Shown here: one piece after another, positions 1 through 21,200 of the stretch
Position numbering within the stretch: position 1 is the first letter of the stretch
Layout: every line of letters begins with the position of its first letter
Assembly (NCBI RefSeq): GCF_000150275.1
Contig: NW_002060945.1
Location: 7,755,684 to 7,819,683, forward strand
DNA from: Trichoplax adhaerens
Lineage: Eukaryota; Animalia; Placozoa
Length of the DNA stretch: 64,000 nucleotides
Direction of reading: 5' to 3'
Translations under genes and position numbers: made by a program
The notes under the pieces: generated by a model
What the model was told of the DNA's origin: nothing
Seen by the model: only the letters and a program-made list of their open reading frames with translations
The model's database searches: none

Positions 1-514
1 AAACTTGTTGCCTAATCGCTAATGCTTTCTGAAACATGGACAGACTCGTGTCGAATTTGGATAAATTCAAATAGATTTCTCCCAAGCCGCTGTAACTGTC
101 AGCAATATCAGGGCTAATTTCGCTGATTTTCTCTAATTTTAACTCTAATGATCTCTTGTAATCAACTAATGCTTCATCATACATCTTTTTTGCTATCTTA
201 ATAGCGCCTTGATTATCTAAACACTTTGCTAATTGCACTTGATCACCTATAAGTCTGGCTGCTTCTTCTGCTTGATTACAATATTCTTCAGCTTTCGTCA
301 AATCACGCTGCTCTAGAAAATTAATGGAAATACGTAGACAAAGGTCGCTTTCAAGCCGATTACCTTTTGCACCACGATTTTTAATAGTTTTTAAAACCTC
401 TAGTGCTTGGTTATAGTGCCATCCAGCTCCTTCAAAATAACCGCATTGATAATTTAGTTGAGCCTTTTTAGTTAAAGATTCAATTCCTCTCATTCGGCAC
501 CAGTTTAAACCCAT
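1..514 (-). CDS. TPR-repeat protein (KLC/NPHP3-type TPR), 5' part; runs off the window start
   Basis: Open frame from ATG at 514: MGLNWCRMRGIESLTKK...QLAKCLDNQGAIK...YDEALVDYKRSLELKLEKISEISPDIADSYSGLGEIY...SMFQKALAIRQQV. Its N-terminal layout matches the 4355-4954 ORF. Confidence 0.85.
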   Translation of the reverse strand, partial: MGLNWCRMRGIESLTKKAQLNYQCGYFEGAGWHYNQALEVLKTIKNRGAKGNRLESDLCLRISINFLEQRDLTKAEEYCNQAEEAARLIGDQVQLAKCLDNQGAIKIAKKMYDEALVDYKRSLELKLEKISEISPDIADSYSGLGEIYLNLSKFDTSLSMFQKALAIRQQV

Positions 515-3231: not shown

Positions 3232-5021
3232 TCACATGAGTAATGATGCATAGACGTCGGCAATATGTTCATAGACTACAGCAATTTCTAAATGATGTGA
3301 TTCTAATTTTTCTGATCTAATATTAAGACATGTATCATGCATCATTAAGGCATTATTATACTTTGATTGTTTGCAATAGATAGTTCCAATATCGTCGTAT
3401 ACACTAGCTATTTTTAGATGCTTGTTATCAGGTAATAATTGTAATCAAATATCTAGGTATTTCTGATACATTTTAAAGGCATCATCGTAGTTACATTGTA
3501 CTTTATATATTGTACCTATAAACTCGTAGGCTAGCACAATTTGTAAATGTGTCTCGCCTAACTTTTTAACCTAACAGTTAATGACTTTTGTAACATAGAT
3601 AGAGCATCATCGTATCTAGAGATTTTATCATATGTTTCTCCTTTATCATAATAGGAGTAACCGAGAAGAATATGTTCCTTTCCTAATCATTCCAGTCTCA
3701 AGTCTAGCGCTTTGTAAAACAACTTCATAGCAACATCTTAGCGACCTAAATAGGAATAACTTTCTGCAGCGCTCTCATATGCAGTGGTATTATAAAACGG
3801 AAGAAGATCTTCAAAAATATCTAATCTAATAGCGAGAGCTTCAGCATACATGAAAGAACTATCTTCCTCTTTTAATTGATAGCGGTAAACATCTCCAATT
3901 TGATGATGCGATACAGAAACCGAGTATTGATTGGTAACTGGCCTTGTCATTTTAATCATTAATACTTTACGGAACATCGCCTTAGCATCTTCGTGCTTTC
4001 CAAGTTTGTAATAGCTTTCTCCAAGATATTCATAGATATTAATTAATGGCTGTCCAGTCATCATCATCAAGTTTCAAGCTTTGTGATATAATATTAAGCA
4101 ATTTCTGATGCATTTCGATCGCTTCATCATATCGTCCGAGGTGATTATATAAATGCCCAATACTATTAATAGTACTAGCGATTGGATATGATGATCGCCT
4201 AGTATATCTAATCGAATCTCGAAAGCCTTGTTATACATTGTGATACCATCTTCATATCGATGTATATGGTGACAATTATCAGCAAATTCATCATATAAAT
4301 CAGCAATCTGCAAATGATGATGGCCCATTTTGCTAATTTAATATCTAAACATTTCTAAAGCATAATCATCGCTTCTTCATGCCGATCGTCACTACAACGG
4401 ATCGCAGCTATCTGTTGAAATGTATTGGCAACTTTAATGGTTGCATTGGTGAGATTTTCCTCAATAATACCACGAATTTGTAAAGATTTTCCATACGTTG
4501 CTATAGCTTCATCACGATTGCCTTGACGATAGTAAACATTTGCTATGTTATCATATACTAGGGCAATGTCTTCATTATCATTGCCCAATAGTTCCTTTAA
4601 CTGCTTTAATGACTCGTTATAATCGTTGAGTGCTTCATCATAATCTTCTAACTTTTTGTTGTATCCTTTGCTTGCTAAGCATTTAGCTAATCGAATTTTA
4701 TCATTTATCCTTTTAATGCTATGTTCAGCTAGTTGACAATATTGTTTATTTTGTGTAATTTGATCTTGGTTCCCATATACAGCTGATAGATCACGATAAA
4801 TATCGTATTTGAATTCATCACGTTGATTATAATTCATTTTGGTAATTTTATCGGCCATATCAATAGCTGGTAAATAGTGGCTTTCTGTTTGTGAATTGTT
4901 TCCATCTTGACAGCAATCGAGACCTTCTTTCCATAAAAAATTGTACTGGATCAATGATAGATTGGTTTGGATGTGATGATGATGAATTATTATTGAGGTT
5001 GTGCTGATTCATGCTAGGCAT
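3232..5021 (-). pseudogene. Disrupted TPR-repeat gene
   Basis: TPR repeats continue across ORFs 4355-4954, 4074-4328 and 3738-4070 and down to about 3232. They are broken by in-frame stops (TAG 4355, TAA 3738, TGA about 3446) and by frameshifts, e.g. between 4354 and 4328, with no intron-sized gaps. Confidence 0.85.
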
Positions 5022-6968: not shown

Positions 6969-9900
6969 TCAATTTGAAGTCGATTTTTCTTCGGCGATTG
7001 CATCTGCAAGGATATCGGCTATATCTTGTCGATTAATTTGTCGTAGTGCTTGTATAAGTCGCTCTGTAGTTGCACGATTATTTTGTTTCCATTTATACAG
7101 TACGGCAATAGCTCTGTTATATACACCTTGATAATCAGCTTCAATTTCATAAATATTGATATGATGGTCTAATTTGGGAGCTAATTTTGTCCAATCTCGA
7201 TGAATTCGCGACGCTATTTCATAAAAGAAACGACTAGGATCTATTCGGATATTAGAACAGATGAAATGAATTTTACATAGTTATAACTTTTATCATTATG
7301 TTAATATTAATACTGATTTTGAAGTGCCAAGTTCTGCATATCAAATACATTTCTTTATCATGTAATATTAAATATTAGATTAAATAGTTGATCATTTGGA
7401 GAAACATGGATGAAAGAAAGAGATAGAAAGAAGCAATAATAAAACTAAATACAGGCAGCTAAAAGCGTTAAGTGTGTCGTTAAAACTTTTAAGATTATAA
7501 TTCAAACTTGCAATACTCTAAGCTAGTTTCTCTACTAGTGCTCACAATTTTTAATCATTATATTTGTAAAATTACCATCCGGTGATGCTGGATGATCTTT
7601 AGTGGGTAGAACAGGTAGCTTTTCTGGATCAGACTGCTTTGATGGGTTGGGCTGCCAAACATGACAAACTTTACTTAGTAAATTAAATAGAGTCTATATA
7701 CTTCACAACTTCAAGATTAATTATAGATGTTGTTCATTTACCTCGTTGGAATTTGCTCTCATCAAGAAACAAACCTTTGCATTAGTGTCTTGCTGCTGGC
7801 CTATAGGCTTTAGAAAGATTTGAGCTATATCATGAGCTGCTTTATTGATAACCTTGCAAACGTAATCGATAGCATGATAGCTATATCGATTCCAATTGAT
7901 AGAAATTGCCTGATTATTGAAATCAGTATCCAGACAATCTAAACCTCGTTTCTTAAATTTAGCTGTGTATTGACCATTTTCTAGAATAGTATTTTCAAGT
8001 CCAGTCGTAGCTAAACGTATCCTGATAAATGCCTGATCAATTCCTGACACGATAGCAGTTTCATCTTCATCTTTTTTAGCTAAGATTAATTTCATATGGA
8101 CAGTATCATCACTTGTGTCTATTTCGGATAGGAAAGCTAACGTATTAATTCGTTGCTGACAAGATGGAAAGATATGCTTGGAGATTAAATAAATGGTAGA
8201 TTTGACGTAGGAATAGATGACATAGTCAGAGAAATGGCTTACTGCAAAAGTAAGGCAATAATATCCATTTTTATCGCGGCTATATTCATACTCTACATCT
8301 TGCTGTTCCCACTTCTCACATCCATAGCTTCGACAAACGATTTTTATTGGGATATTAAAGTTGTTGTTTTTCTTAAGAAGTGAAACTATCTGGTTGATAT
8401 ATGGAACGGGGACTTGAAGTAAAGCTTTCCTTGTGCTATTAGGGGTAAATTGATACCCATCCGGCTCGAGGCGAACGATTGGTGATAACTGGATAAAGTG
8501 GTTACCATCAGCATCTTTCTGAATTGGTAAACCTTGATTATAAGGTGGATCTGCATAGTATACAGTCATGGTTAGGACGGCCTCGTCGGCTATACACTGA
8601 GCTGGAAGATGAAATTTTAATCCAGGTACTCCAGGCAAGGTTAAATCATGATCTTGATTAACTTGACAGTTATTCGATACCTTAGGATAGCCAGCTTTGG
8701 CTGTTGCGATAGTTGACGTTATATAAGAATAGAAATGAAATTGATGATTTAGAAAGTACTGTCAATGGCAAGAAATGTTCTCCTATGCCTGCGTTTCTTC
8801 TAGTTAAAAGTACTCTTCGATTTCAATGCACTAATAAATAGAATAGCTCTGTTATTACATAATGAGACTATAATTTAGAGAGGAAAGGTTGCGGATAGAA
8901 AGATACTGTCGAAAACTGCTCTCCTATCTCTTATGAAAACAAAATTAACCTGGATTCATTCCTGGAAATAAATGGCATTTCGCTGGATTCTTTTTTATTT
9001 TTCCTGATCTAAGATTATTATCTGGCTCAAAAATAATAGAAGAACATAAATAACAACAACATGTTCAGCCATTCACTTTTCTTATATTAAAGCAGCTGTT
9101 GTCTACTTGAATAGCTAATCCCATTCGCATTTACTTAACGCAACAGCATTATACGTATTTCCTTAATTTCTTAATATTGATTATTGGTCGTAGGTGTTTT
9201 AGTTAATAAATTGCTTACTCTTGTTCTTCCTGTTTCCGATGTTCTCGGTCAAGTGAGAATTAGAGCTCTTACCACCTGAAACAGTTCAATGTCAAAACAA
9301 TTTGCAATGCATCATTTATCATAAACAAACTCTCTCATGTTTAAGAAGCATACACTTAAATCGGCATGAAATATACTCATAACAATATTGATGTATAACG
9401 GGGCTTTTTATCCAAAAGTATTTCAAGCTCCGGTTTATAAACTGAGCCGGTAATGGTAACTATGACAAAGTCTAGCATAGCAAAACTACGATAATTATGG
9501 GTGTAAGTTCTATACAATTCTAAATCCTTTTTTAAATGCTAATTTATAGATTGAGTTGGTAATGATAGCTACGACAAGTCTAGCATAGAAAAACTGCGAT
9601 AATTATAATCATTAATTTAAGTTCTGTGCAATTGTTCCTGCTGCTATCATTTCAAGTACAATGAAGCAAGGAACTTTAATAATTAAACTTTTCAGAATTA
9701 AATATTACCTGTTGGAGAGGATCTCATTATGATACCTTTCTCTATCGACAATCCAGCAGATTGGTTAGGAGCTGCTGATATAAAATTAATGTAATCAGAA
9801 TAAGAGATTGGTATAAATATAATGTTATAGTAATAATAGATATTCAATCCAAGTTCAGTAGCCTCAATTCTCTGTTACTATACGCGTATTACTCAGTTAT

Positions 9901-12064
9901 AGAATAGTCCCAAACTAAATTCAAATCAGCAACTATATAATGCGCGATGCACCATTCTCTTTCTCTATCTTATACGAACAGTAATTAACTAATAGCCTAG
10001 TATTTATTGCAACCTTAGCCTATCAGATTTAGGATAAAGTTAGTTTAAGAATGGTGAGGATTAGAAAATTAATAGAATCGTAGATAATTAGGGTTTGCAC
10101 TATGAATGGTAGCCTTTAGTGACTTCAATCCGAAGGAGCTTTGCTTCTAATCATACCAATCAAATATTTACTAATTATAAGTTTACTTTCTCGCCATTAT
10201 TCACTTAGAGGTATACGAGCCTGATCATATGCTCATGATGTTAATCGATTCATGATTAGCCTTGATCTAGTAGCATCATCGTTTTTAACATGATATTATC
10301 ACTTTCTAATCGTATTTGCTAGGATAGATCATAAAACAGCCATAGCCTTACCGCTATGATTTGAAAGTAAGCCAGAAGAAGGTGCAGCAGGCGGCTTAGA
10401 AACGCTTTGACTTTGCATCTTTCGTTGATTACTTTTCTTTGAACTTGATGTTGAAGTAGCACCAAAAGTGTATGCATCGATAGAAAGATTTTTAGTTTGA
10501 GTAATCAACATTGATAATGATTTAGGCTTGTGTCACAAAACAGCTTTGCAACAAGATAACGTAATCTACGATCAATAAGTCAATTCCTTGAACTACGTAT
10601 CAAGGAACGATATCTGCACTATCACGAGCACTTTTGCTCTACTAGCAGACTACACAAAGACTTAAACGCCTCGTATTTTACGTTAAACACTAAGTTGGAC
10701 AATTCTTCTTTATTTCACGATATACTGCATTTATATACTATTCCTCAATAGTTCATGAGTCATAGTTAATACAATTAACATTAGAATCATTTACTGAATT
10801 AGATATTAATTTTAGCTACTGCTCTCTTAATGCAGACAACAGTATTTACGAACATAGACATGTAATAACTAATACAGAATAGTCAGATTACGATATGTCC
10901 TATCACGGAACATTTCCATGATAATTTACAGTCTATCATAAGTAAATTACAATCACAATGATTCGAACTGTAAGCAGATGATTTGCATTCCCTATTATAA
11001 CTATTATAATTTCAGTATGTGTATAAGTGTCACTGTCATAAAAAGTCAGTGCTATATTAAAATACAGTATATCCAAATTAGAAGTTAACTAAATAAGGAT
11101 AGTCTAACAGAATTATCCTAACATAGTTATTTCTACTGTAATACAGTATTTAACACTGTAACAGCTTGGTAGTTACTTTTCCCAGACTACTGTTTGTGCT
11201 ACCAGAAGCTTTCATGGAACTTTCCGCATTACCTCTATGTCTACTCATTTTATATCGTTTATGTTCTCTACTTGAGCTGAAGAATGACTTAATCATTTCC
11301 ATCATTTGCCTTTCCTTATTAGGTTTAAGTTGATAGTTATTTTCCGTCTCCTGTAAATATTCTGAATCATGGATAGACCCTTTAATCGATTCTTTATAGT
11401 ATCTTTCATTACTCGCTGTGGCTATGTAGGTGTGTGCTTTACTAGACCAGGTGTCAAGAGTTTCCTCATCACTACTCAATTGCTCTTGGTGATACGATGT
11501 AGATCCCTTAAGCACATCAAGTTGAATATGGCTGGCTTGATCCATTAGAGATTGTTGTGATTCCTCACTATCATCACTACTCTCCGATCCATGGATACCT
11601 TCTGCTTCGGTAATGTCAGATTTAGCCACATTACCACTTATTACAGGAGGTATGCTTTCCCTATGATTCCATTCTTGCTCAATATCACTTTCTACCTTAT
11701 TCGATAGAGTAGATTGAGGAGAGTTATAGAAATCCGTATTTAATAAGACTGACTTATCGTTGCTGCTGCTATCCCGCTCTTCATCAGTTTCTTTTCTAGG
11801 TCTCTCTGAGTGAAAGTCGCCAACAGGGATATTTGTATAATCTCTATCGTTTTTTTCCTTATTATCCTCTTTCATCTTGGTAAAATCTGATCGAGTATTG
11901 ACCTGATCATCCATCATCCCTCTCTTATCGCCACCTTTTGCCTTGACTAAACCAAAACGAGCATTGCTTGCATCGTCGATTACAATTTGAGAATCTTCTC
12001 GTTCTCTGGAGATAAACTCAGTTAAATCTTCCGATGGCAGAAGAAAATCCCTATGTCGTTCCAT
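6969..12064 (-). CDS. ZU5-UPA-death domain protein (PIDD/UNC5CL-like) with a long acidic low-complexity N-terminus
   Basis: Phase-consistent exons: 12064-11177, 10526-10352, 9774-9709, 9275-9219, 9021-8950, 8700-7742, 7651-7576, 7240-6969. ZU5-like segment '...QLSPIVRLEPDGYQF...LLQVPVP...FAVSHFS'. The last exon is a clear death domain: FFYEIASRIHRDWTKLAPKL...EIEADYQGVYNRAIAVLYKWKQNNRATTERLIQALRQINRQDIADIL. The 5' exons are less certain than the 3' ones, and the UPA assignment is by position. Confidence 0.8.
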
Positions 12065-14473: not shown

Positions 14474-17400
14474 CTATCCACAACCAGTTTTGCTGAGGAA
14501 GCAACATTTCATATCGAGACCATGCTGTTGACCTATAGGTAGCAAAAAGATCCGAGCAATATTAAACCAAGGCATATGTGGATTGATAAACTTGCAATCG
14601 AAATCAAGGTGATAATAATCTTTCTGATTCCAATCAATAGAGATGATTTGCATGGCAGTATCTTGATTTAGGCATTCTAAATCCATTTTCCTAAATTCGA
14701 TTTGGTATGGACCATTTTCTAATATAACTTGTTCAAGGCCCGACGCGGCAAGTTGAGTCACTTTTAATTTGGTTCGGACTTGATCTGCAATAGCTCTCTC
14801 ATCAGCATTTATTCTCGCTAATATCAGTTTTAAGTGAGTAGTATGCTTACTACTATGAATTTCAGATAGATAAGCTAATACTTTAACTTGCTGCTGATAA
14901 GTTGGATATAGTCGCTTAGAAACAAATTGCATGCTTGATCGAATATATGAATAAACAACATAATCGCATAAGTGATTGATTGCAAATACCAAGCAGTGAC
15001 GACCATCTTTATCCAATTTATAATTATATTTAATCTTTTCCATTTTGCACTTGCTTCCTTTATCATTTAGACAAACAATTCTGATAGGGATTTGGTTAAT
15101 ATCATCAAGCTGAAGGAGTTTACATAATTCACTAGTATTAGCAATAGGTACCTGAAGTAATACGGGATTATTTCCATTTGATTCTAATTGACAATAGTCT
15201 GGTTCTAGTCTTACAACGGGGGATAAGGGAATTAATTGGTAGCCTACATGATTATTCTCATACTGAGTTAGTAAATCAAGCATGTACGGTGGATCTGCGT
15301 AGTAGACAGTCATTGTTATTAAAGTATTGTCCGTCATTGACGGAGAATTTAGCTGTAGCCTTAATCCAGGCACTTGAGATAAAGTCATAACTTGGTTTTG
15401 ACCACTTCGACAAATTTTCGATACTTGTGGATAGCCATCAAATGCTAAAATTAACATCATATTTTGTTAGTTGAAATTATAATTAGAAAAGGAGCCGGAT
15501 ATTATAGTAGTCTTGGTTGTTGGAATAGTAACGGATCAATCTAACTAATGAAATGACTTAGGATAATATTAGATTCTATAGACGACTACAGTTATGGTAT
15601 TCAAATGCACACTGTGCGAGTACTTCTCTAATTTAAAATACTTACCGATCTCTTTTTCTGCTACTTCTTCAGTTATTGTGGTCATGGAAAATTTACGCCA
15701 TGACTGACCAGTGCTATGAGCTAAATTTTGCGCTAATAAAAGTATAAGATATCATGTTTAGCAGACCTAATGAACTCGCAGTAAAGCGAATGCAATTCTT
15801 ATAATCTTATCGTTAAGGCTAATTTAGTAGAATACTGGCGATAAAGATTTGATAAGCGTAATTGACTTGCAATAAATTGCATACAATGTTCATCATCATG
15901 TCGATAAGCATAACTTTGCTATGAAGAGGAACTTAAAAGATCTGTTAAATGTAATCGAGTTGCATCCTGTTATTACGCTCGTTTTTAAGAGGACTATAAG
16001 CAGCAAACCCCATTTACTTGTAGTAAAAGGTTATATTGCTTATAATCTTGTAATTAACTGCTGAAGAATTTAATGTGGAACCTAATAAATTAGATATATT
16101 ATTTATTATTTGTTTTTAAGCTCAGTATTCCTATAGCATTAAAACAATTAGCAAGTTTAACCAGCTCGTAGCAAGAGAAATCTGCCCTTGTAGTCTTATT
16201 ATAAAATTCAATTTCATATAACAGTATCATCAGCAGACCTGTTAAACGTAATTGACTTGCAACCAAATAAATGTAAGGCCTATAATTTTATTTATCGGGC
16301 TCAAGTTTGCATAATAGAGATGTTAAAGGCCTGATAAACGTAACTAGCTTTCAACAAAGTGATATAATACAAATAGCTGCTAGAACAACGGGATAAAGCT
16401 TTTATAGTAAAAGAAACTCCTATTGGAGAAGTACAAGGAAATTTAATTTTTATACAATACAAATAGCAGTAAGAATGGTGCAGTAAAACTTTTATAGTAA
16501 AGAAATTCCTGTTGGAAAAGAACCGACAAATTCAATTTTTATCTAATAATTGAGTTAAATTAGTGCGCCAAATTTCATCGTTTTTGTACATCATTCATGT
16601 AAATTTTTTATGATAGTTACCAGTAAATATTAATCTTCCCTAAGCTAACTCAGCACAATGGAAAATTTAATATCTACATCTACTGATGTGGCTAATCATC
16701 TATGTCTTATTACAGATGATAAAAACGTGGTATGGCTATTACCAAACCAAGCTCAAAATCAATTTCAAGAATACATAGAGCTTACCATTGCGATCTTTCC
16801 TTTCCTGTCCAGAGACTGACTCTATTAATAAATCTGCAGGTTCCGTTTGCCATTCTGGACATAAAAATTTTCCAATGTTAAAACAAATTTAGTAAACGAT
16901 AAGTAGTAAATGCAATATTCATTTGTAAACAAGTTAAACAATGTAAAAGGGCGTTGGAGTTAATATTAATACACTACTACTGTGCATTACCAAAGTAAGG
17001 TAATGGTTATCGAGAGGCCTACCTGGTTGCGTAAGCAATTCCTTCCTTCCTTTACTTGTAGACTGTGTATACGTAATTTGCTGATGTCGAGCTTTACTTC
17101 GAATCCTAGATGAAATTTGTTTGATCGCTTTAACCATTTGATAGTTGTGTTGTTTTTGATAGATTTGAGCAATATTATCGTAAATAGTTGTGACCAAGGA
17201 ATGATGAACTCCAAATAGTTGTACAGTGATAGCTAGAGCTTTTTGATACTTGGATAAAGCTTCATCATACTTGGCTTGATGTGAAAAAATACTACCCAAA
17301 TTATTATAGCAAACGGCAACATCGTAATGATTTGCTCCAACTAATTTTAATGTAATATCCAGACAATTTTGATACATAACGATAGCAAGATTGTATTTAT

Positions 17401-18223
17401 TCTGCTTAAAGTAGACATTACCAATGTTATTATACGAATTAGCAACATCTAAATGATGTAGACCCAATATTTTGATTCGGCTCTCCAATGCTTTCTCATA
17501 CATGGCAAGCGCTTTTTGATATTTCAATTCATCAAAATAAATGCTACCAATATTATTATAAGATGTTGCTATCAGTAGGTTATCCTTTCCTAACAGTTTC
17601 AGTGCTATACGTTGAAATTTCTGATACATTGATAGTGCAAATTGATAATTACATTGTTGGTAGTGGATATTTCCCATGTTATTGTAAAGGATAGCTACAT
17701 CTAAATGTTGATTTCCTAGCAATTTCGAATAGATATGCAATGATTTCTCATACGTTGTTAAAGCATCCTTATATTTGGCCAAGTCATAGTAGACGTTACC
17801 AATATTTCGATAGGAAATGGCAATATCGATATCGTGGTAATTGCCTAATAGCTGTAACTTAATATTTAGCGATCTTTCAAACATGGATAAGGCTCGATGA
17901 TATTTGGACTGATGATAATAGATACGTCCTATATGATCACAAGTTATTGCTACATCTAAATGATTATTCTCCAATATAATTAATTTAATGTCTAATGACT
18001 TATGATACATACAAAGGCCATCATCGAACTGCGATTGATGGTAATAAATATGCCCAATCTTGTCATAAATAACAGCAACCTCGATATGGCAGTTACCAAA
18101 TGATTCTAATTTAGAGGCTAATAATTTCTTATACTCATTCAATATTAGTTGAAGAGATCTTTGACCATTTTTTGTATGATCTTGGCTAGCTAAAGATTTA
18201 TTTATTGTAGATTCATTCTCCAT
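14474..18223 (-). CDS. TPR-repeat-ZU5-UPA-like fusion protein (no death domain)
   Basis: Exon 1 (18223-17023) encodes about 8 KLC-type TPRs and ends at a phase-1 donor, CCAG|GTAGGC. Two symmetric phase-1 exons follow, 16854-16786 (69 bp) and 15720-15646 (75 bp), both stop-free with AG/GTAAG ends. The last exon, 15444-14474, is paralogous to exon 8700-7742 (GYPQVS/GYPKVS, MTVYYADPPY, LSPVVRLEPD). Confidence 0.7.
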
Positions 18224-21200
18224 TGTGGATTGATCAGTAGTTCTTACTACCAGTTATTGTCGACGTTAATTTACTACAAATTACTATAACTCCAGTTATG
18301 CTGTCGATATTCAATTTCAGAATAAACTAAGACTGATCCGAATCCAATTATAGAATTTAGCTCCGGTGATTGTTGATTTCATCGACCCGTAGAAACAACA
18401 AATTTTGCAGTACCAAGGCGCAAACATAAGATTGAATAGAATTCTTGAACGAGTTTTGCTATAACTAGACCCAAGAGAAAGATTTATCGAAAAGATCTAT
18501 CGACTATTATCGTACTCCCAGGTATAAGATTCTTGTCACTCTTGTTAAAAATTGGCTAGAACTGTGTGATAAGTAGGCTATAATATTTACTTGATATTTA
18601 ATTGATTAACGAGTGGGTTAGATTTGAATCTTATAGGCTTATGACGAGTTGATTGTTATTCCTTAATCGACAATTGATTTTCGTTACATGAGCTCCGAGG
18701 AAAAAAATTTATTAGACATATCTAGCAACCATGTCGGATTCTTGCGGCTCGGAATATAAAATTGGGCTAATCTTGTAAGAAGCAAGTGCAAACTTTACCG
18801 ATGAAATATCAGTGTACCTATATATTTAATTCAGTGGTTACTGGACATTAACCTAAACTCAAATAGGATATGTACTATTCAATATCTTGAATCTTGGCTA
18901 AGCCAGTGATTTTATTACAACCAGGTAATATACAAGTATAGATTTATTTTGAAAAAATGATAAATTTGAATCAAAATTTTAATTGCCATAATTCCCTTTC
19001 CATGCTGTAGAAACATTGATTTGCAATCCAATTTGTATCGGTAAAACTTTTAATCCTAGTTAAGCCTGAAAATGTTGTTTCTGACTTAATCAGCTAATCG
19101 ATCTGATTATTTTTTTTATTATTCATAGCTGATATTAAGATGATAATCATAGAATGAGACTTAAACAACTCTATTTATTTTGTGGATGATTTTCAATCGC
19201 TGGTATACGGCCGAAAGTAAAGTTGTCAATTTCTTTCAAAGCCCCTATAATCGAGTTCTAAAATCAGAATGTATATGAGATTCCTAAAAATTATCCTGAC
19301 GCAATATTAGTCGATTTGATAGTTCTTGTAATATTAAATCAATAGCAGAAGAGGAATAGATCAATTAGTCATTTAGAAAATATCTATCTTCCTTCTACAA
19401 ATAGTAGATTTAGATTCAATTAGTTCTTATCCAATATTGATCAAATTAGGCTGTTTTCAGTATAACACTACATCCCAGTAGGATAGAAGATTAAATAACT
19501 TCTCTAATTGCCAGCAAGAATATTTGTCTCCTTTTCTAATATGATTAATTTCGCTTAGATAAAATTATTCTAAATCGGTTTCTCGATAAGTCTGGCTGTT
19601 CTTCGCATCGTACTCAAATTTATAGAAAATAGTAATAGATGATCAGTACCACTTTACCGAAGGTTAGTATTCTCTTAATTGATTATGAGTACAAGTCTGG
19701 GTATTTTTAATCTCAACAATATATGAATGATAAAGCAAATGCAGGAGCGATGATGGAGCAATTTCTGTGAAGGTCAATTTTCTATTATTCTTGTAATATG
19801 GATAACAAACTTGAATTAATTTGTCTGTATCAGGGATTAATCAAGCCTCATCTGTTCCCAATATTAAAATTAAAGAAAATGTTGAACAGAAGATAGTATC
19901 ATATCGTTAACAGTACATTTCGAATTCTGGCGTTCCAATTTAATGATGAGCATGAAATAAAAGTAGTCTAGTCCAAGGTTAATAATTTTTGACCATTTTC
20001 TTTCTATAAGCTATAAGAGTAGTAGAAAATAAGTAATATTCCTCTTACCGTTAATATTTTCCATTCGAGACAGGATGGATTATAATAAATTGAGTTACGT
20101 TCTTGAATAATATAATGAGAAGGGAAAGACTGAATTAAATACTATAGAGATATGGGATAGTATTTCAAGCACCAGCCGATGAAAGAGCTTTATTGATGGA
20201 TATTTTATAATGCCTCTCTTACCGATCGTCTACCGAGAAAAATTGCAATCTGCCAATGTTTGCACGTTGGATTAATAATGTCTAAGCTCTCTAAGAAATA
20301 GCTTATTGTCTTAAAAGCCATATCCTACTAAAATGGAATAATATCATATGATACTCCATCAATAGAACAAGTAATAATAAATTATCTTCAGCAATTAGCC
20401 AGAAATAAATTGGCGCCGTCATGCTGATCCTATCAATGTCTGTAAATTAATCCTTTTTAATAAGTACCGTTGCCTAGCATATTATAATTGCAGTCTTGAT
20501 GGAAAGAATAGAATTGATTTCATAACGTACGCATATTCAATGGTAACAGAGAATCAGAAGTGCGAGACAAGAACTATTCAGAAGACAGGATAATCCCATG
20601 TGAATGATGGATAATATTCAGCATAAGGCAATTAGTACCGCAGACATAGCAGCTGACAATTCAATTTTCAATCCCATTTCATGGAGATTGATTGCCTCTT
20701 CTATGCATAATGGATAATTGTCAGTACATTAATTTAGAAGAAAAGTGGACAATAATGAGAAAGAATCTGTGAGTAGTTTCATCACGAGTTTAATACTGAA
20801 AATCTTCGTAATGATGTTTTAATGTCAGCACCTACGTCATATTGCTGTTAAAATTATCTTGTAACCAGGTGTTTTAATTCATTCTTATTGGATAATTTAA
20901 TACTTAGCAGAGTAGATATTGACGCAAGATCAAGCAGACAATTTCATTATTTTATGATATCTACAGATAAAAACTTGCAAAAGAATCTCAACAATTAAAT
21001 TATTAAGAATCAGCCCATAGCAAAAGAGTCTATTCTAGGCTAGAAGTGCGATATTACACGGTACTGTATACATGTACCTAATTCATCGATAGTTGCTATC
21101 TATCCAATCTGATCTTGCTTAAGTCAAGTAGAATAGCTTATTTTCTAGGTGCTTACCCCAGCTAGAGTTTGACGCATAGTTTTGGTTTATAAATCTCTTC

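What the first reader, a model, noticed from the sequence alone, without database searches (positions are those of the whole stretch)
8228..8236. Intact HFS autoproteolysis motif at the end of the ZU5 domain
Seen: FAVS-H-F-S-DYV (CAT TTC TCT) at the ZU5/UPA boundary. Established: PIDD1, UNC5CL and Nup98 self-cleave at HF|S by an N-O acyl shift. Inference: the protein releases a UPA-DD fragment starting SDYVIY, equivalent to PIDD-CC, and sheds its disordered acidic N-terminal half.
Basis: partly seen in the sequence, partly recalled or inferred. Interest (0 to 1): 0.8.

Follow-up and report, generated by a model that had tools for sequence, protein, structure and literature searches.

The report
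Placozoan ZU5-UPA-death-domain protein, intact HFS
The His-Phe-Ser tripeptide is real and lies at the self-cleavage position of a PIDD/NLRP1-type ZU5-UPA-death-domain module in a Trichoplax gene, so the protein probably cuts itself there, but this is a new member of a known kind and cleavage has not been shown.

Summary
The contig is Trichoplax adhaerens, not human. CAT TTC TCT at 8236-8228 on the minus strand encodes HFS. It lies inside a 320-codon exon of TRIADDRAFT_54879 (766 aa, HFS = residues 498-500).

Pfam does not see a ZU5 domain in this protein. An AlphaFold model of the exon (pLDDT 79.6) does: its top eight Foldseek matches in the PDB are ankyrin-B ZU5-ZU5-UPA-DD (E 1.6e-10), UNC5b, NLRP1 and CARD8 (VIA Z 12.7). 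HFS sits in a three-residue loop just before the last ZU5 strand, which is where CARD8, NLRP1 and PIDD1 cut.

A family profile aligns this HFS exactly on the HFS of the second ZU5 in LRR-ZU5-ZU5-UPA-DD proteins (PIDD1 architecture). Of 141 aligned domains, 82% carry H-F-[S/T/C] there.

A Pfam death domain (E 4.6e-14) follows, after one short linker exon. The N-terminal 341 residues are acidic, Ser-rich and mostly below pLDDT 50.

Cleavage itself is untested. "Shedding" is too simple, because the strand after the cut belongs to the ZU5 sandwich, so the two fragments should stay bound until the N-terminal piece is removed.

The scan has already met this gene family on other scaffolds of this genome.

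Verdict: new member of a known kind, moderate interest.

The parts
8228..8236 (-). HFS codons (His498-Phe499-Ser500 of TRIADDRAFT_54879); predicted scissile bond is Phe|Ser
7742..8700 (-). ZU5-UPA exon. Acceptor cag|CC at 8700 (phase 1). Donor GAG|gtaaat after 7742 (phase 0) is used by the H2 orthologue and by paralogue models. The H1 model instead ends at 7775 (AAG|gtttgt), which removes the last UPA strand.
8198..8692 (-). ZU5 beta-sandwich (exon residues 1-165), including the post-site strand SDYVIYSYV
   Evidence: VIA: isolated ankyrin ZU5 3f59_D Z 10.5, rmsd 3.3, model 1..162. Pfam ZU5 over cut-off in paralogues P0008 and L019.
7751..8161 (-). UPA beta-sandwich (exon residues 178-314)
   Evidence: Alignments to 4d8o, 3g5b, 7crw and 7jn7 span model residues 1..311-314. 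Single-sandwich matches start at 178-181.
7576..7651 (-). Pro-rich linker exon (PNPSKQSDPEKLPVLPTKDHPASPD), phase 0 to 1
   Evidence: Low pLDDT over protein residues 645-673.
6972..7240 (-). Death-domain exon; stop codon at 6969-6971
   Evidence: Pfam PF00531, E 4.6e-14, 52.7 bits against cut-off 22.6. pLDDT 80-96.
8950..9021 (-). Linker exon, phase 1-1 (NNLRSGKIKKNPAKCHLFPGMNP)
9219..9275 (-). Linker exon, phase 1-1
9709..9774 (-). Linker exon, phase 1-1
10352..10526 (-). Extra Ser-rich linker exon present only in the Trichoplax sp. H2 gene model
11233..12064 (-). First coding exon: acidic, Ser-rich N-terminal region (ATG at 12064). Single copy in the genome; mostly below pLDDT 50.

Best explanation
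The window encodes TRIADDRAFT_54879 (orthologue TrispH2_007479). Its architecture is a roughly 340-residue acidic, probably disordered N-terminal region, then one ZU5, then UPA, a Pro-rich linker and a death domain.

His498-Phe499-Ser500 is the homologue of the PIDD1-type autoprocessing tripeptide. It sits in a tight loop just before the last ZU5 strand.

Most likely mechanism (inferred):
1. After folding, the buried Phe strains the Phe-Ser bond.
2. The Ser hydroxyl attacks the preceding carbonyl (N-O acyl shift), and the resulting ester is hydrolysed.
3. This gives an N-fragment (disordered region plus most of ZU5) and a C-fragment of about 267-278 residues, depending on the splice model, that starts SDYVIY (last ZU5 strand, UPA, DD).
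4. The C-fragment's first strand remains inserted in the ZU5 sandwich, so the two pieces stay together. The death domain becomes signalling-competent only when the N-fragment is degraded or unfolded, as in NLRP1/CARD8 'functional degradation' or PIDD-CC release.
5. The freed UPA-DD then recruits death-domain partners.

Shown here: the fold, the position and homology of the site, the death domain and the gene structure. Inferred: cleavage, continued association of the fragments, the release trigger and downstream partners.
For: Fold:
- AF2 model of the exon has pLDDT 79.6. In the full-length model the module reaches about 90.
- The top eight Foldseek PDB matches are all ZU5-UPA proteins: 4d8o E 1.6e-10, 3g5b 1.9e-8, 7crw 2.8e-7, 7jn7 5e-4.
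- VIA Z is 12.7 for 4d8o and 10.5 (rmsd 3.3) for the isolated ankyrin ZU5.

Site:
- HFS lies in the loop between strands 145-151 and 155-163. [quoted passage not shown]
- The profile of 18 family members hits LRR-ZU5-ZU5-UPA-DD proteins of Owenia, Tubulanus, Branchiostoma and Saccoglossus at library-wide E 2e-39 to 1e-30.
- Local hmmsearch places the family's HFS column exactly on their HFSWY of the second ZU5 (HFSFF in two unnamed DD-ZU5 relatives, P0039 and P0040), and in three cases (P0025, P0030, P0039) also on HFSLF of the first ZU5.
- 116 of 141 aligned domains have H-F-[STC] at this column.

Death domain: PF00531, E 4.6e-14.

Gene model: H1 model P0014 and H2 model P0135 both join the acidic exon to ZU5-UPA-DD.

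Constraint: the ZU5 part up to the site has dN/dS 0.36-0.56 against close paralogues.

Published mechanism: PIDD1, Nup98 and Unc5CL autoprocess at His-Phe-Ser (PMC9162469, PMC7883297).
Against: - There is no experimental evidence of cleavage for any placozoan member.
- Pfam ZU5 gives no hit for this protein, even at E <= 10.
- Sequence-only matches to solved ZU5 chains are weak (E 0.11) and cover only the N-terminal part of the domain.
- About half of the non-redundant Trichoplax paralogues have lost the nucleophile (Ala or Gly at the Ser position), so the module can persist without cleavage.
- Other determinants known from CARD8 (distant His and Glu) and PIDD1 (N-terminal region) could not be mapped.
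- Low pLDDT in the N-terminus may partly reflect the lack of homologues in the alignment.
Confidence: 0.65

Rival explanations
1. The module is a non-cleaving ZU5-UPA-DD scaffold, a closed and autoinhibited supramodule like UNC5b or ankyrin. The HFS is kept for structural reasons: Phe as a core anchor, His and Ser tolerated. Signalling would then depend on conformational opening rather than proteolysis.
For: - The best structural matches are the non-cleaving ankyrin and UNC5b modules.
- Six of 13 non-redundant paralogues lack a nucleophile and still keep the fold.
- Phe is conserved (9/13) more often than Ser (5/13).
Against: - Across the wider family the whole triad H-F-[STC] is kept in 82% of domains.
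- Within Trichoplax, His co-occurs with a nucleophile (6 of 7, against 2 of 6 without one).
- The closest sequence relatives outside Placozoa have PIDD1 architecture with HFS at both known cleavage positions.
- In UNC5b the equivalent of the Phe is Leu (PMC3210808).
Confidence: 0.22
2. The gene is one drifting copy of a fast-duplicating, exon-shuffling placozoan family. The HFS is merely inherited and this copy has no selected function.
For: - There are many paralogues, some with in-frame stops.
- Overall dN/dS against close paralogues is about 1.1-1.7.
- The acidic first exon is unique to this gene.
Against: - All seven to eight exons are open, with splice sites in consistent phase.
- The ZU5 half has dN/dS 0.36-0.56 with the same dS as the other half, so the excess is localised and not uniform decay.
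- The gene is modelled intact in both Trichoplax species.
Confidence: 0.1
3. The HFS is a chance tripeptide in a fold unrelated to ZU5.
For: HFS occurs 18 times in the six frames of the window. Pfam finds no ZU5 in this exon.
Against: Fold matches, the profile alignment to PIDD1-architecture proteins and column conservation.
Confidence: 0.01

Closest known systems
PIDD1 (LRR-ZU5-ZU5-UPA-DD), second autoprocessing site (human S588, yields PIDD-CC)
   Same: The ZU5-UPA-DD order is the same. The HFS tripeptide occupies the same profile column as the second-ZU5 HFS of PIDD1-architecture proteins. The predicted C-fragment is last ZU5 strand + UPA + DD.
   Different: There are no LRRs and only one ZU5. 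The N-terminus is a unique acidic, low-complexity region. The death domain shows no special similarity to the PIDD death domain (E 0.06-0.08). It is not an orthologue.
FIIND of NLRP1 and CARD8 (ZU5-UPA-CARD, cleavage at SF|S)
   Same: Same two-sandwich fold (7crw E 2.8e-7, 7jn7 E 5e-4; VIA Z 9.2-9.4). The cleavage loop lies just before the last ZU5 strand. CARD8 also has a disordered N-terminus, which suggests release by degradation of the N-fragment.
   Different: The output domain is a death domain, not a CARD. The motif is HFS rather than SFS. There is no NACHT/LRR, and no DPP8/9-type checkpoint is known.
UNC5CL / UNC5 and ankyrin ZU5-UPA-DD supramodules
   Same: Same ZU5-UPA-DD module. These are the best structural matches (4d8o, 3g5b). 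Unc5CL is reported to autoprocess by the same mechanism (PMC7883297).
   Different: No transmembrane or ankyrin-repeat part is evident. UNC5b and ankyrins lack the catalytic triad and are not cleaved.
GAIN/GPS domain of adhesion GPCRs and the Nup98 autoproteolytic domain (ZU5 superfamily, Zhang et al. 2012)
   Same: The ZU5 part of the model aligns to GAIN subdomain B at VIA Z 8.2-9.7. In both, the cleavage motif precedes the last strand, and that strand stays bound after cleavage.
   Different: The context (extracellular receptor, nuclear pore) and partner domains differ. The match is at fold level only.

Membership tests
ZU5-UPA-DD module proteins with PIDD-type autoprocessing site | ZU5 beta-sandwich fold | tested here: met
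   Foldseek 4d8o E 1.6e-10. VIA Z 10.5-11 with rmsd 3.3-4.1 to isolated ankyrin ZU5 domains.
ZU5-UPA-DD module proteins with PIDD-type autoprocessing site | UPA sandwich directly after ZU5 | tested here: met
   Alignments to 4d8o, 3g5b, 7crw and 7jn7 run over model residues 1..311-314. The profile alignment to PIDD1-architecture proteins covers positions 2-304.
ZU5-UPA-DD module proteins with PIDD-type autoprocessing site | C-terminal death domain | tested here: met
   PF00531, E 4.6e-14, 52.7 bits against cut-off 22.6. The splice link is supported by P0014, P0135, P0004 and P0006.
ZU5-UPA-DD module proteins with PIDD-type autoprocessing site | His-Phe-Ser in the loop before the last ZU5 strand, homologous to the PIDD1 sites | tested here: met
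   Model loop 152-154 and strand 155-163. Column identity with HFSWY/HFSFF/HFSLF. 82% H-F-[STC] across 141 domains.
ZU5-UPA-DD module proteins with PIDD-type autoprocessing site | Self-cleavage abolished by Ser-to-Ala | not testable with these tools
   Needs protein expression and mutagenesis.
ZU5-UPA-DD module proteins with PIDD-type autoprocessing site | Pfam ZU5 (PF00791) over the gathering score | tested here: not met
   No hit for this exon or for P0014, even at E <= 10. Met by paralogues P0008 (28.5 bits) and L019 (21.6 bits) against cut-off 21. The Pfam model covers only the first two thirds of the structural domain.
PIDD1 orthologue | N-terminal leucine-rich repeats | tested here: not met
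   Pfam finds only Death in P0014. Residues 1-341 are mostly below pLDDT 50.
PIDD1 orthologue | Two tandem ZU5 domains, each with HFS | tested here: not met
   A single profile match, 346-651, in P0014.
FIIND (NLRP1/CARD8) | ZU5-UPA followed by a CARD; SF|S motif | tested here: not met
   The C-terminal domain is Death, not CARD. The motif is HFS.

The most novel reading that the evidence does not exclude
Placozoans carry a lineage-specific, rapidly diversifying family of self-cleaving ZU5-UPA(-DD) 'tripwire' sensors that work by N-terminal functional degradation, like NLRP1/CARD8. Each paralogue would have a different bait: here a unique acidic disordered region, next door a TPR array. The UPA-DD output would be under diversifying selection and would feed CARD-DD adaptors and CARD-caspases. 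That would put the inflammasome-type 'cleave first, release on degradation' logic at the base of animals.
Probability: 0.15. Interest if true: 0.8.

Novelty: new member of a known kind. Interest (0 to 1): 0.45.

Why it matters
If the site is active, autoproteolytic ZU5-UPA signalling modules of the PIDD1/NLRP1/CARD8 type exist in one of the earliest-branching animal lineages, and have been expanded and re-wired there. In Trichoplax they are coupled to death domains and to unusual N-terminal parts (disordered acidic regions, TPR arrays).

The family also provides natural variants in one genome: Ser, Cys and dead sites at the cleavage position. These could be used to study what makes a ZU5 cleave.

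On its own, an intact HFS in a ZU5-UPA-DD protein is the default state of this clade, not a surprise.

Tried and rejected
- Pfam on the exon alone gave nothing relevant.
- Sequence and profile searches against PDB chains gave only a weak ankyrin-2 hit (E 0.11) over the N-terminal ZU5 motif. It did not reach the HFS.
- The word-based protein search returned no named relatives outside Placozoa, only Trichoplax models and unnamed metagenome proteins. I therefore used the full-library profile search once.
- VIA ranges alone could not give a residue-level match to the cleaved NLRP1 UPA chain: 7crv_B aligned over model 62..317.
- The '3440-aa open frame' at one paralogue is an artefact of an N-filled gap.
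- The death domain shows no specific affinity to the PIDD death domain.
- The Tinel 2007 paper is not held; I cited reviews instead.
- I did not build my own spliced protein. The joined step was left out, and the database models P0014 and P0135 were used by id.
- No complex-prediction job was sent. A pass for two halves of one fold would not have changed my odds.

Full report
**Origin of the contig.** The assembly has 105.6 Mb in 1,414 contigs at about 33% G+C. Protein hits carry TRIADDRAFT and TrispH2 names. The window is therefore Trichoplax adhaerens and not human, and no restriction on human sequence applies.

**Observation.** Plus-strand bases 8228-8236 are agagaaatg. On the minus strand this reads CAT TTC TCT = His-Phe-Ser, within FAVSHFSDYVIY. 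The codons lie in a stop-free stretch, 7724-8761. HFS as a bare tripeptide occurs 18 times in the six frames of the window. The observation has weight only because of where it sits.

**Gene structure.**
- The exon starts at 8700 (cag|CC, phase 1).
- It ends at 7742 (GAG|gtaaat), or at 7775 (AAG|gtttgt) in the H1 annotation.
- A 76-nt Pro-rich linker exon follows (7576-7651), then a death-domain exon (6972-7240; Pfam Death E 4.6e-14).
- Upstream lie three short phase 1-1 linker exons (8950-9021, 9219-9275, 9709-9774) and a first exon (11233-12064). The first exon encodes an acidic, Ser-rich region: D+E 18%, S 15%, net charge -17.
- This is the annotated gene TRIADDRAFT_54879 (XP_002111180.1, UniProt B3RT90, 'Death domain-containing protein', 766 aa).
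- The Trichoplax sp. H2 orthologue, TrispH2_007479 (858 aa, 97-99% identical), has the same layout. It also has an extra linker exon (10352-10526) and uses the downstream donor at 7742. Paralogue models P0004, P0005 and P0006 use the equivalent downstream donor too.
- The upstream donor would remove the last predicted UPA strand, so I prefer 7742.
The database models were used by id.

**Fold.**
- Pfam does not recognise ZU5 or UPA in this protein.
- Paralogues P0008 (28.5 bits) and L019 (21.6 bits) pass the ZU5 cut-off over profile positions 8-74 of 97.
- An AlphaFold2 model of the exon, built with 12 paralogues, has mean pLDDT 79.6. In the full-length model the module reaches about 90.
- The eight best Foldseek matches in the PDB are all ZU5-UPA proteins: ankyrin-B ZU5-ZU5-UPA-DD 4d8o (E 1.6e-10), the ankyrin-spectrin complexes, UNC5b 3g5b (1.9e-8), rat NLRP1 7crw (2.8e-7) and CARD8 7jn7 (5e-4).
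- VIA-align gives Z 12.7 for 4d8o. It gives Z 10.5 (rmsd 3.3, 132 residues) for the isolated ankyrin ZU5 over model residues 1-162. Unrelated single-sandwich matches begin at 178-181.
- So ZU5 is about residues 1-165 and UPA about 178-314.

**Position of the motif.**
- HFS is residues 153-155 of the exon. It lies in a short loop between strand 145-151 (YCLTFAV) and the long strand 155-163 (SDYVIYSYV), and that strand still belongs to the ZU5 sandwich.
- I could not inspect coordinates, so Phe burial is untested.

**Homology of the site.**
- A profile of 18 family members was searched against 1.84 billion representatives. It found 123 proteins at E <= 1e-3.
- Beyond Placozoa, named relatives include 900-1,040-residue proteins from Owenia, Tubulanus, Branchiostoma and Saccoglossus. 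Their Pfam content is LRR + ZU5 + Death, and each has two profile-matched ZU5 stretches. This is the PIDD1 architecture.
- In local hmmsearch alignments (domain E 1e-45 to 3e-30), the family's 'ishfsdy' positions fall exactly on HFSWY of the second ZU5 of three named PIDD1-architecture proteins (the Saccoglossus protein has NFC there), and on HFSFF in two unnamed DD-ZU5 relatives (P0039, P0040). In the weaker first-domain alignments of P0025, P0030 and P0039 they fall on HFSLF.
- In human PIDD1 the two sites are F445|S446 and S588. The second produces PIDD-CC (PMC9162469).
- Of 141 aligned domains that cover the column, 100 have HFS, 11 HFT and 5 HFC.

**Variation inside Trichoplax.** The genome holds at least 24 matches to this exon. 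Among 13 copies that are less than 70% identical to each other, the site reads as follows:

| Site | Copies |
|---|---|
| HFS | 4, including this gene |
| HFC | 1 |
| HLC | 1 (the neighbour at window 14477-15466, TRIADDRAFT_54880, TPR + ZU5-UPA without a DD) |
| RFS | 1 |
| HFA | 1 |
| YFA | 2 |
| RLA | 1 |
| RTG | 1 |
| HCG | 1 |

His accompanies a nucleophile in 6 of 7 copies, and is present in 2 of 6 copies without one. The family therefore mixes probably cleavable and probably dead modules. This is the main reason to keep a non-cleaving scaffold as a live rival.

**Selection.**
- I compared this gene with its close paralogues (about 82% identical).
- Codons 1-152 (ZU5 up to the site) have dN/dS 0.36-0.56.
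- Codons 153-317 (last strand, linker, UPA) have dN/dS 1.6-3.3, with similar dS in both halves (0.05-0.09). The binomial p is 0.005 in two comparisons, which are not independent of each other.
- This argues against simple decay. It suggests that the would-be released fragment is diversifying. Counts are small, and a proper codon model is needed.

**N-terminal half.** In the full-length model, residues 1-341 are almost entirely below pLDDT 50. ZU5-UPA is near 90, the linker 645-673 is low, and the DD is 80-96. The first exon has no paralogue in the genome. 'Disordered acidic N-terminal half' is a fair description. The caveat is that a shallow alignment also lowers pLDDT.

**Mechanism.**
- Established for PIDD1, Nup98 and Unc5CL: an N-O acyl shift at His-Phe-Ser (PMC9162469, PMC7883297, PMC3210808).
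- Inferred here: cleavage between Phe499 and Ser500, yielding a C-fragment that starts SDYVIY.
- The C-fragment's first strand is part of the ZU5 sandwich. I therefore expect the fragments to stay associated, and release to require loss of the N-fragment, as for NLRP1 and CARD8 (PMC9162469, PMC9213247).
- Possible downstream partners exist. The genome has at least 118 Death and at least 39 CARD matches. At least three same-strand CARD-then-Death exon pairs lie about 1.1-1.3 kb apart, which is a CRADD-like layout. This is circumstantial.

**Comparison and novelty.**
- The protein works like PIDD-CC generation or the FIIND, but it is not a PIDD1 orthologue: it has no LRR and only one ZU5. It is not a FIIND protein either, because its output is a DD rather than a CARD.
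- ZU5 autopeptidases, their link to GAIN/GPS and Nup98, and a lineage-specific expansion in sponges are already described (PMC3482391). My GAIN matches at Z 8.2-9.7 fit that picture.
- I found no paper that describes the placozoan family. A survey of placozoan immunity does not mention it (PMC6321704).
- Other agents of this scan have already noted the family on other scaffolds of this genome.

**Verdict.** This is a new member of a known kind, of moderate interest.

Noticed in passing
window 7742-8692 against L002, L003, L004, L005: dN/dS changes at the cleavage site. It is 0.36-0.56 for ZU5 up to HFS and 1.6-3.3 for the last strand, linker and UPA, with similar dS in both halves. The fragment that would be released seems to be diversifying among recent paralogues.
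   Followed up: partly
P0025 (Owenia fusiformis CAH1794394.1), P0028 (Tubulanus polymorphus XP_074647770.1), P0030, P0034: LRR-ZU5-ZU5-UPA-DD proteins (PIDD1 architecture; the annelid, nemertean and amphioxus ones have HFS in both ZU5s) exist in an annelid, a nemertean, amphioxus and a hemichordate. A 2024 survey (PMC11463336) reported no PIDD in lophotrochozoans. Orthology to PIDD1 was not tested.
   Followed up: partly
window 7742-7775: The H1 gene model TRIADDRAFT_54879 uses donor AAG|gtttgt at 7775. This removes 11 residues that form the last predicted UPA strand. The H2 orthologue and the paralogue models use GAG|gtaaat at 7742.
   Followed up: yes
window 10352-10526 and 11165-11233: The H2 orthologue's model has 81 more residues: a longer first exon plus an extra Ser-rich exon. 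In the H1 sequence the matching first-exon boundary reads AAG|ct, which is not a canonical donor. This may be a species difference or a model error.
   Followed up: partly
window 14477-15466 and 16937-18253 (minus): The neighbouring gene TRIADDRAFT_54880 ('Nephrocystin-3' in H2) is a TPR array plus a ZU5-UPA module. It has HLC in the HFS column and no death domain in its model.
   Followed up: partly
L019 (G000:C1344:29000-30600): One paralogue has an acidic, Ser-rich insert of about 200 residues directly after HFS and its strand, before the UPA domain, in a single open frame.
   Followed up: no
G000:C1408:2458570-2460073; C1404:1707760-1709421; C1404:1797746-1799122: Same-strand CARD exon followed about 1.1-1.3 kb later by a Death exon, a CRADD/RAIDD-like layout. 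The genome has at least 118 Death and at least 39 CARD matches.
   Followed up: no
model residues 1-171 of the exon: The ZU5 part aligns to GAIN domains of adhesion GPCRs (ADGRB2, BAI3, CD97, CELSR1) at VIA Z 8.2-9.7. This is consistent with the proposed ZU5/GPS/Nup98 superfamily.
   Followed up: no
G000:C1414:12555392-12556273 and 12558390-12559271 (L008, L009): Two identical tandem copies of a ZU5-UPA exon lie 3 kb apart. Database model P0013 fuses them into one 718-aa protein.
   Followed up: no
window 3235-5008 (minus): A run of TPR_12-type repeats lies downstream of the death-domain exon. It is probably a separate TPR gene.
   Followed up: no
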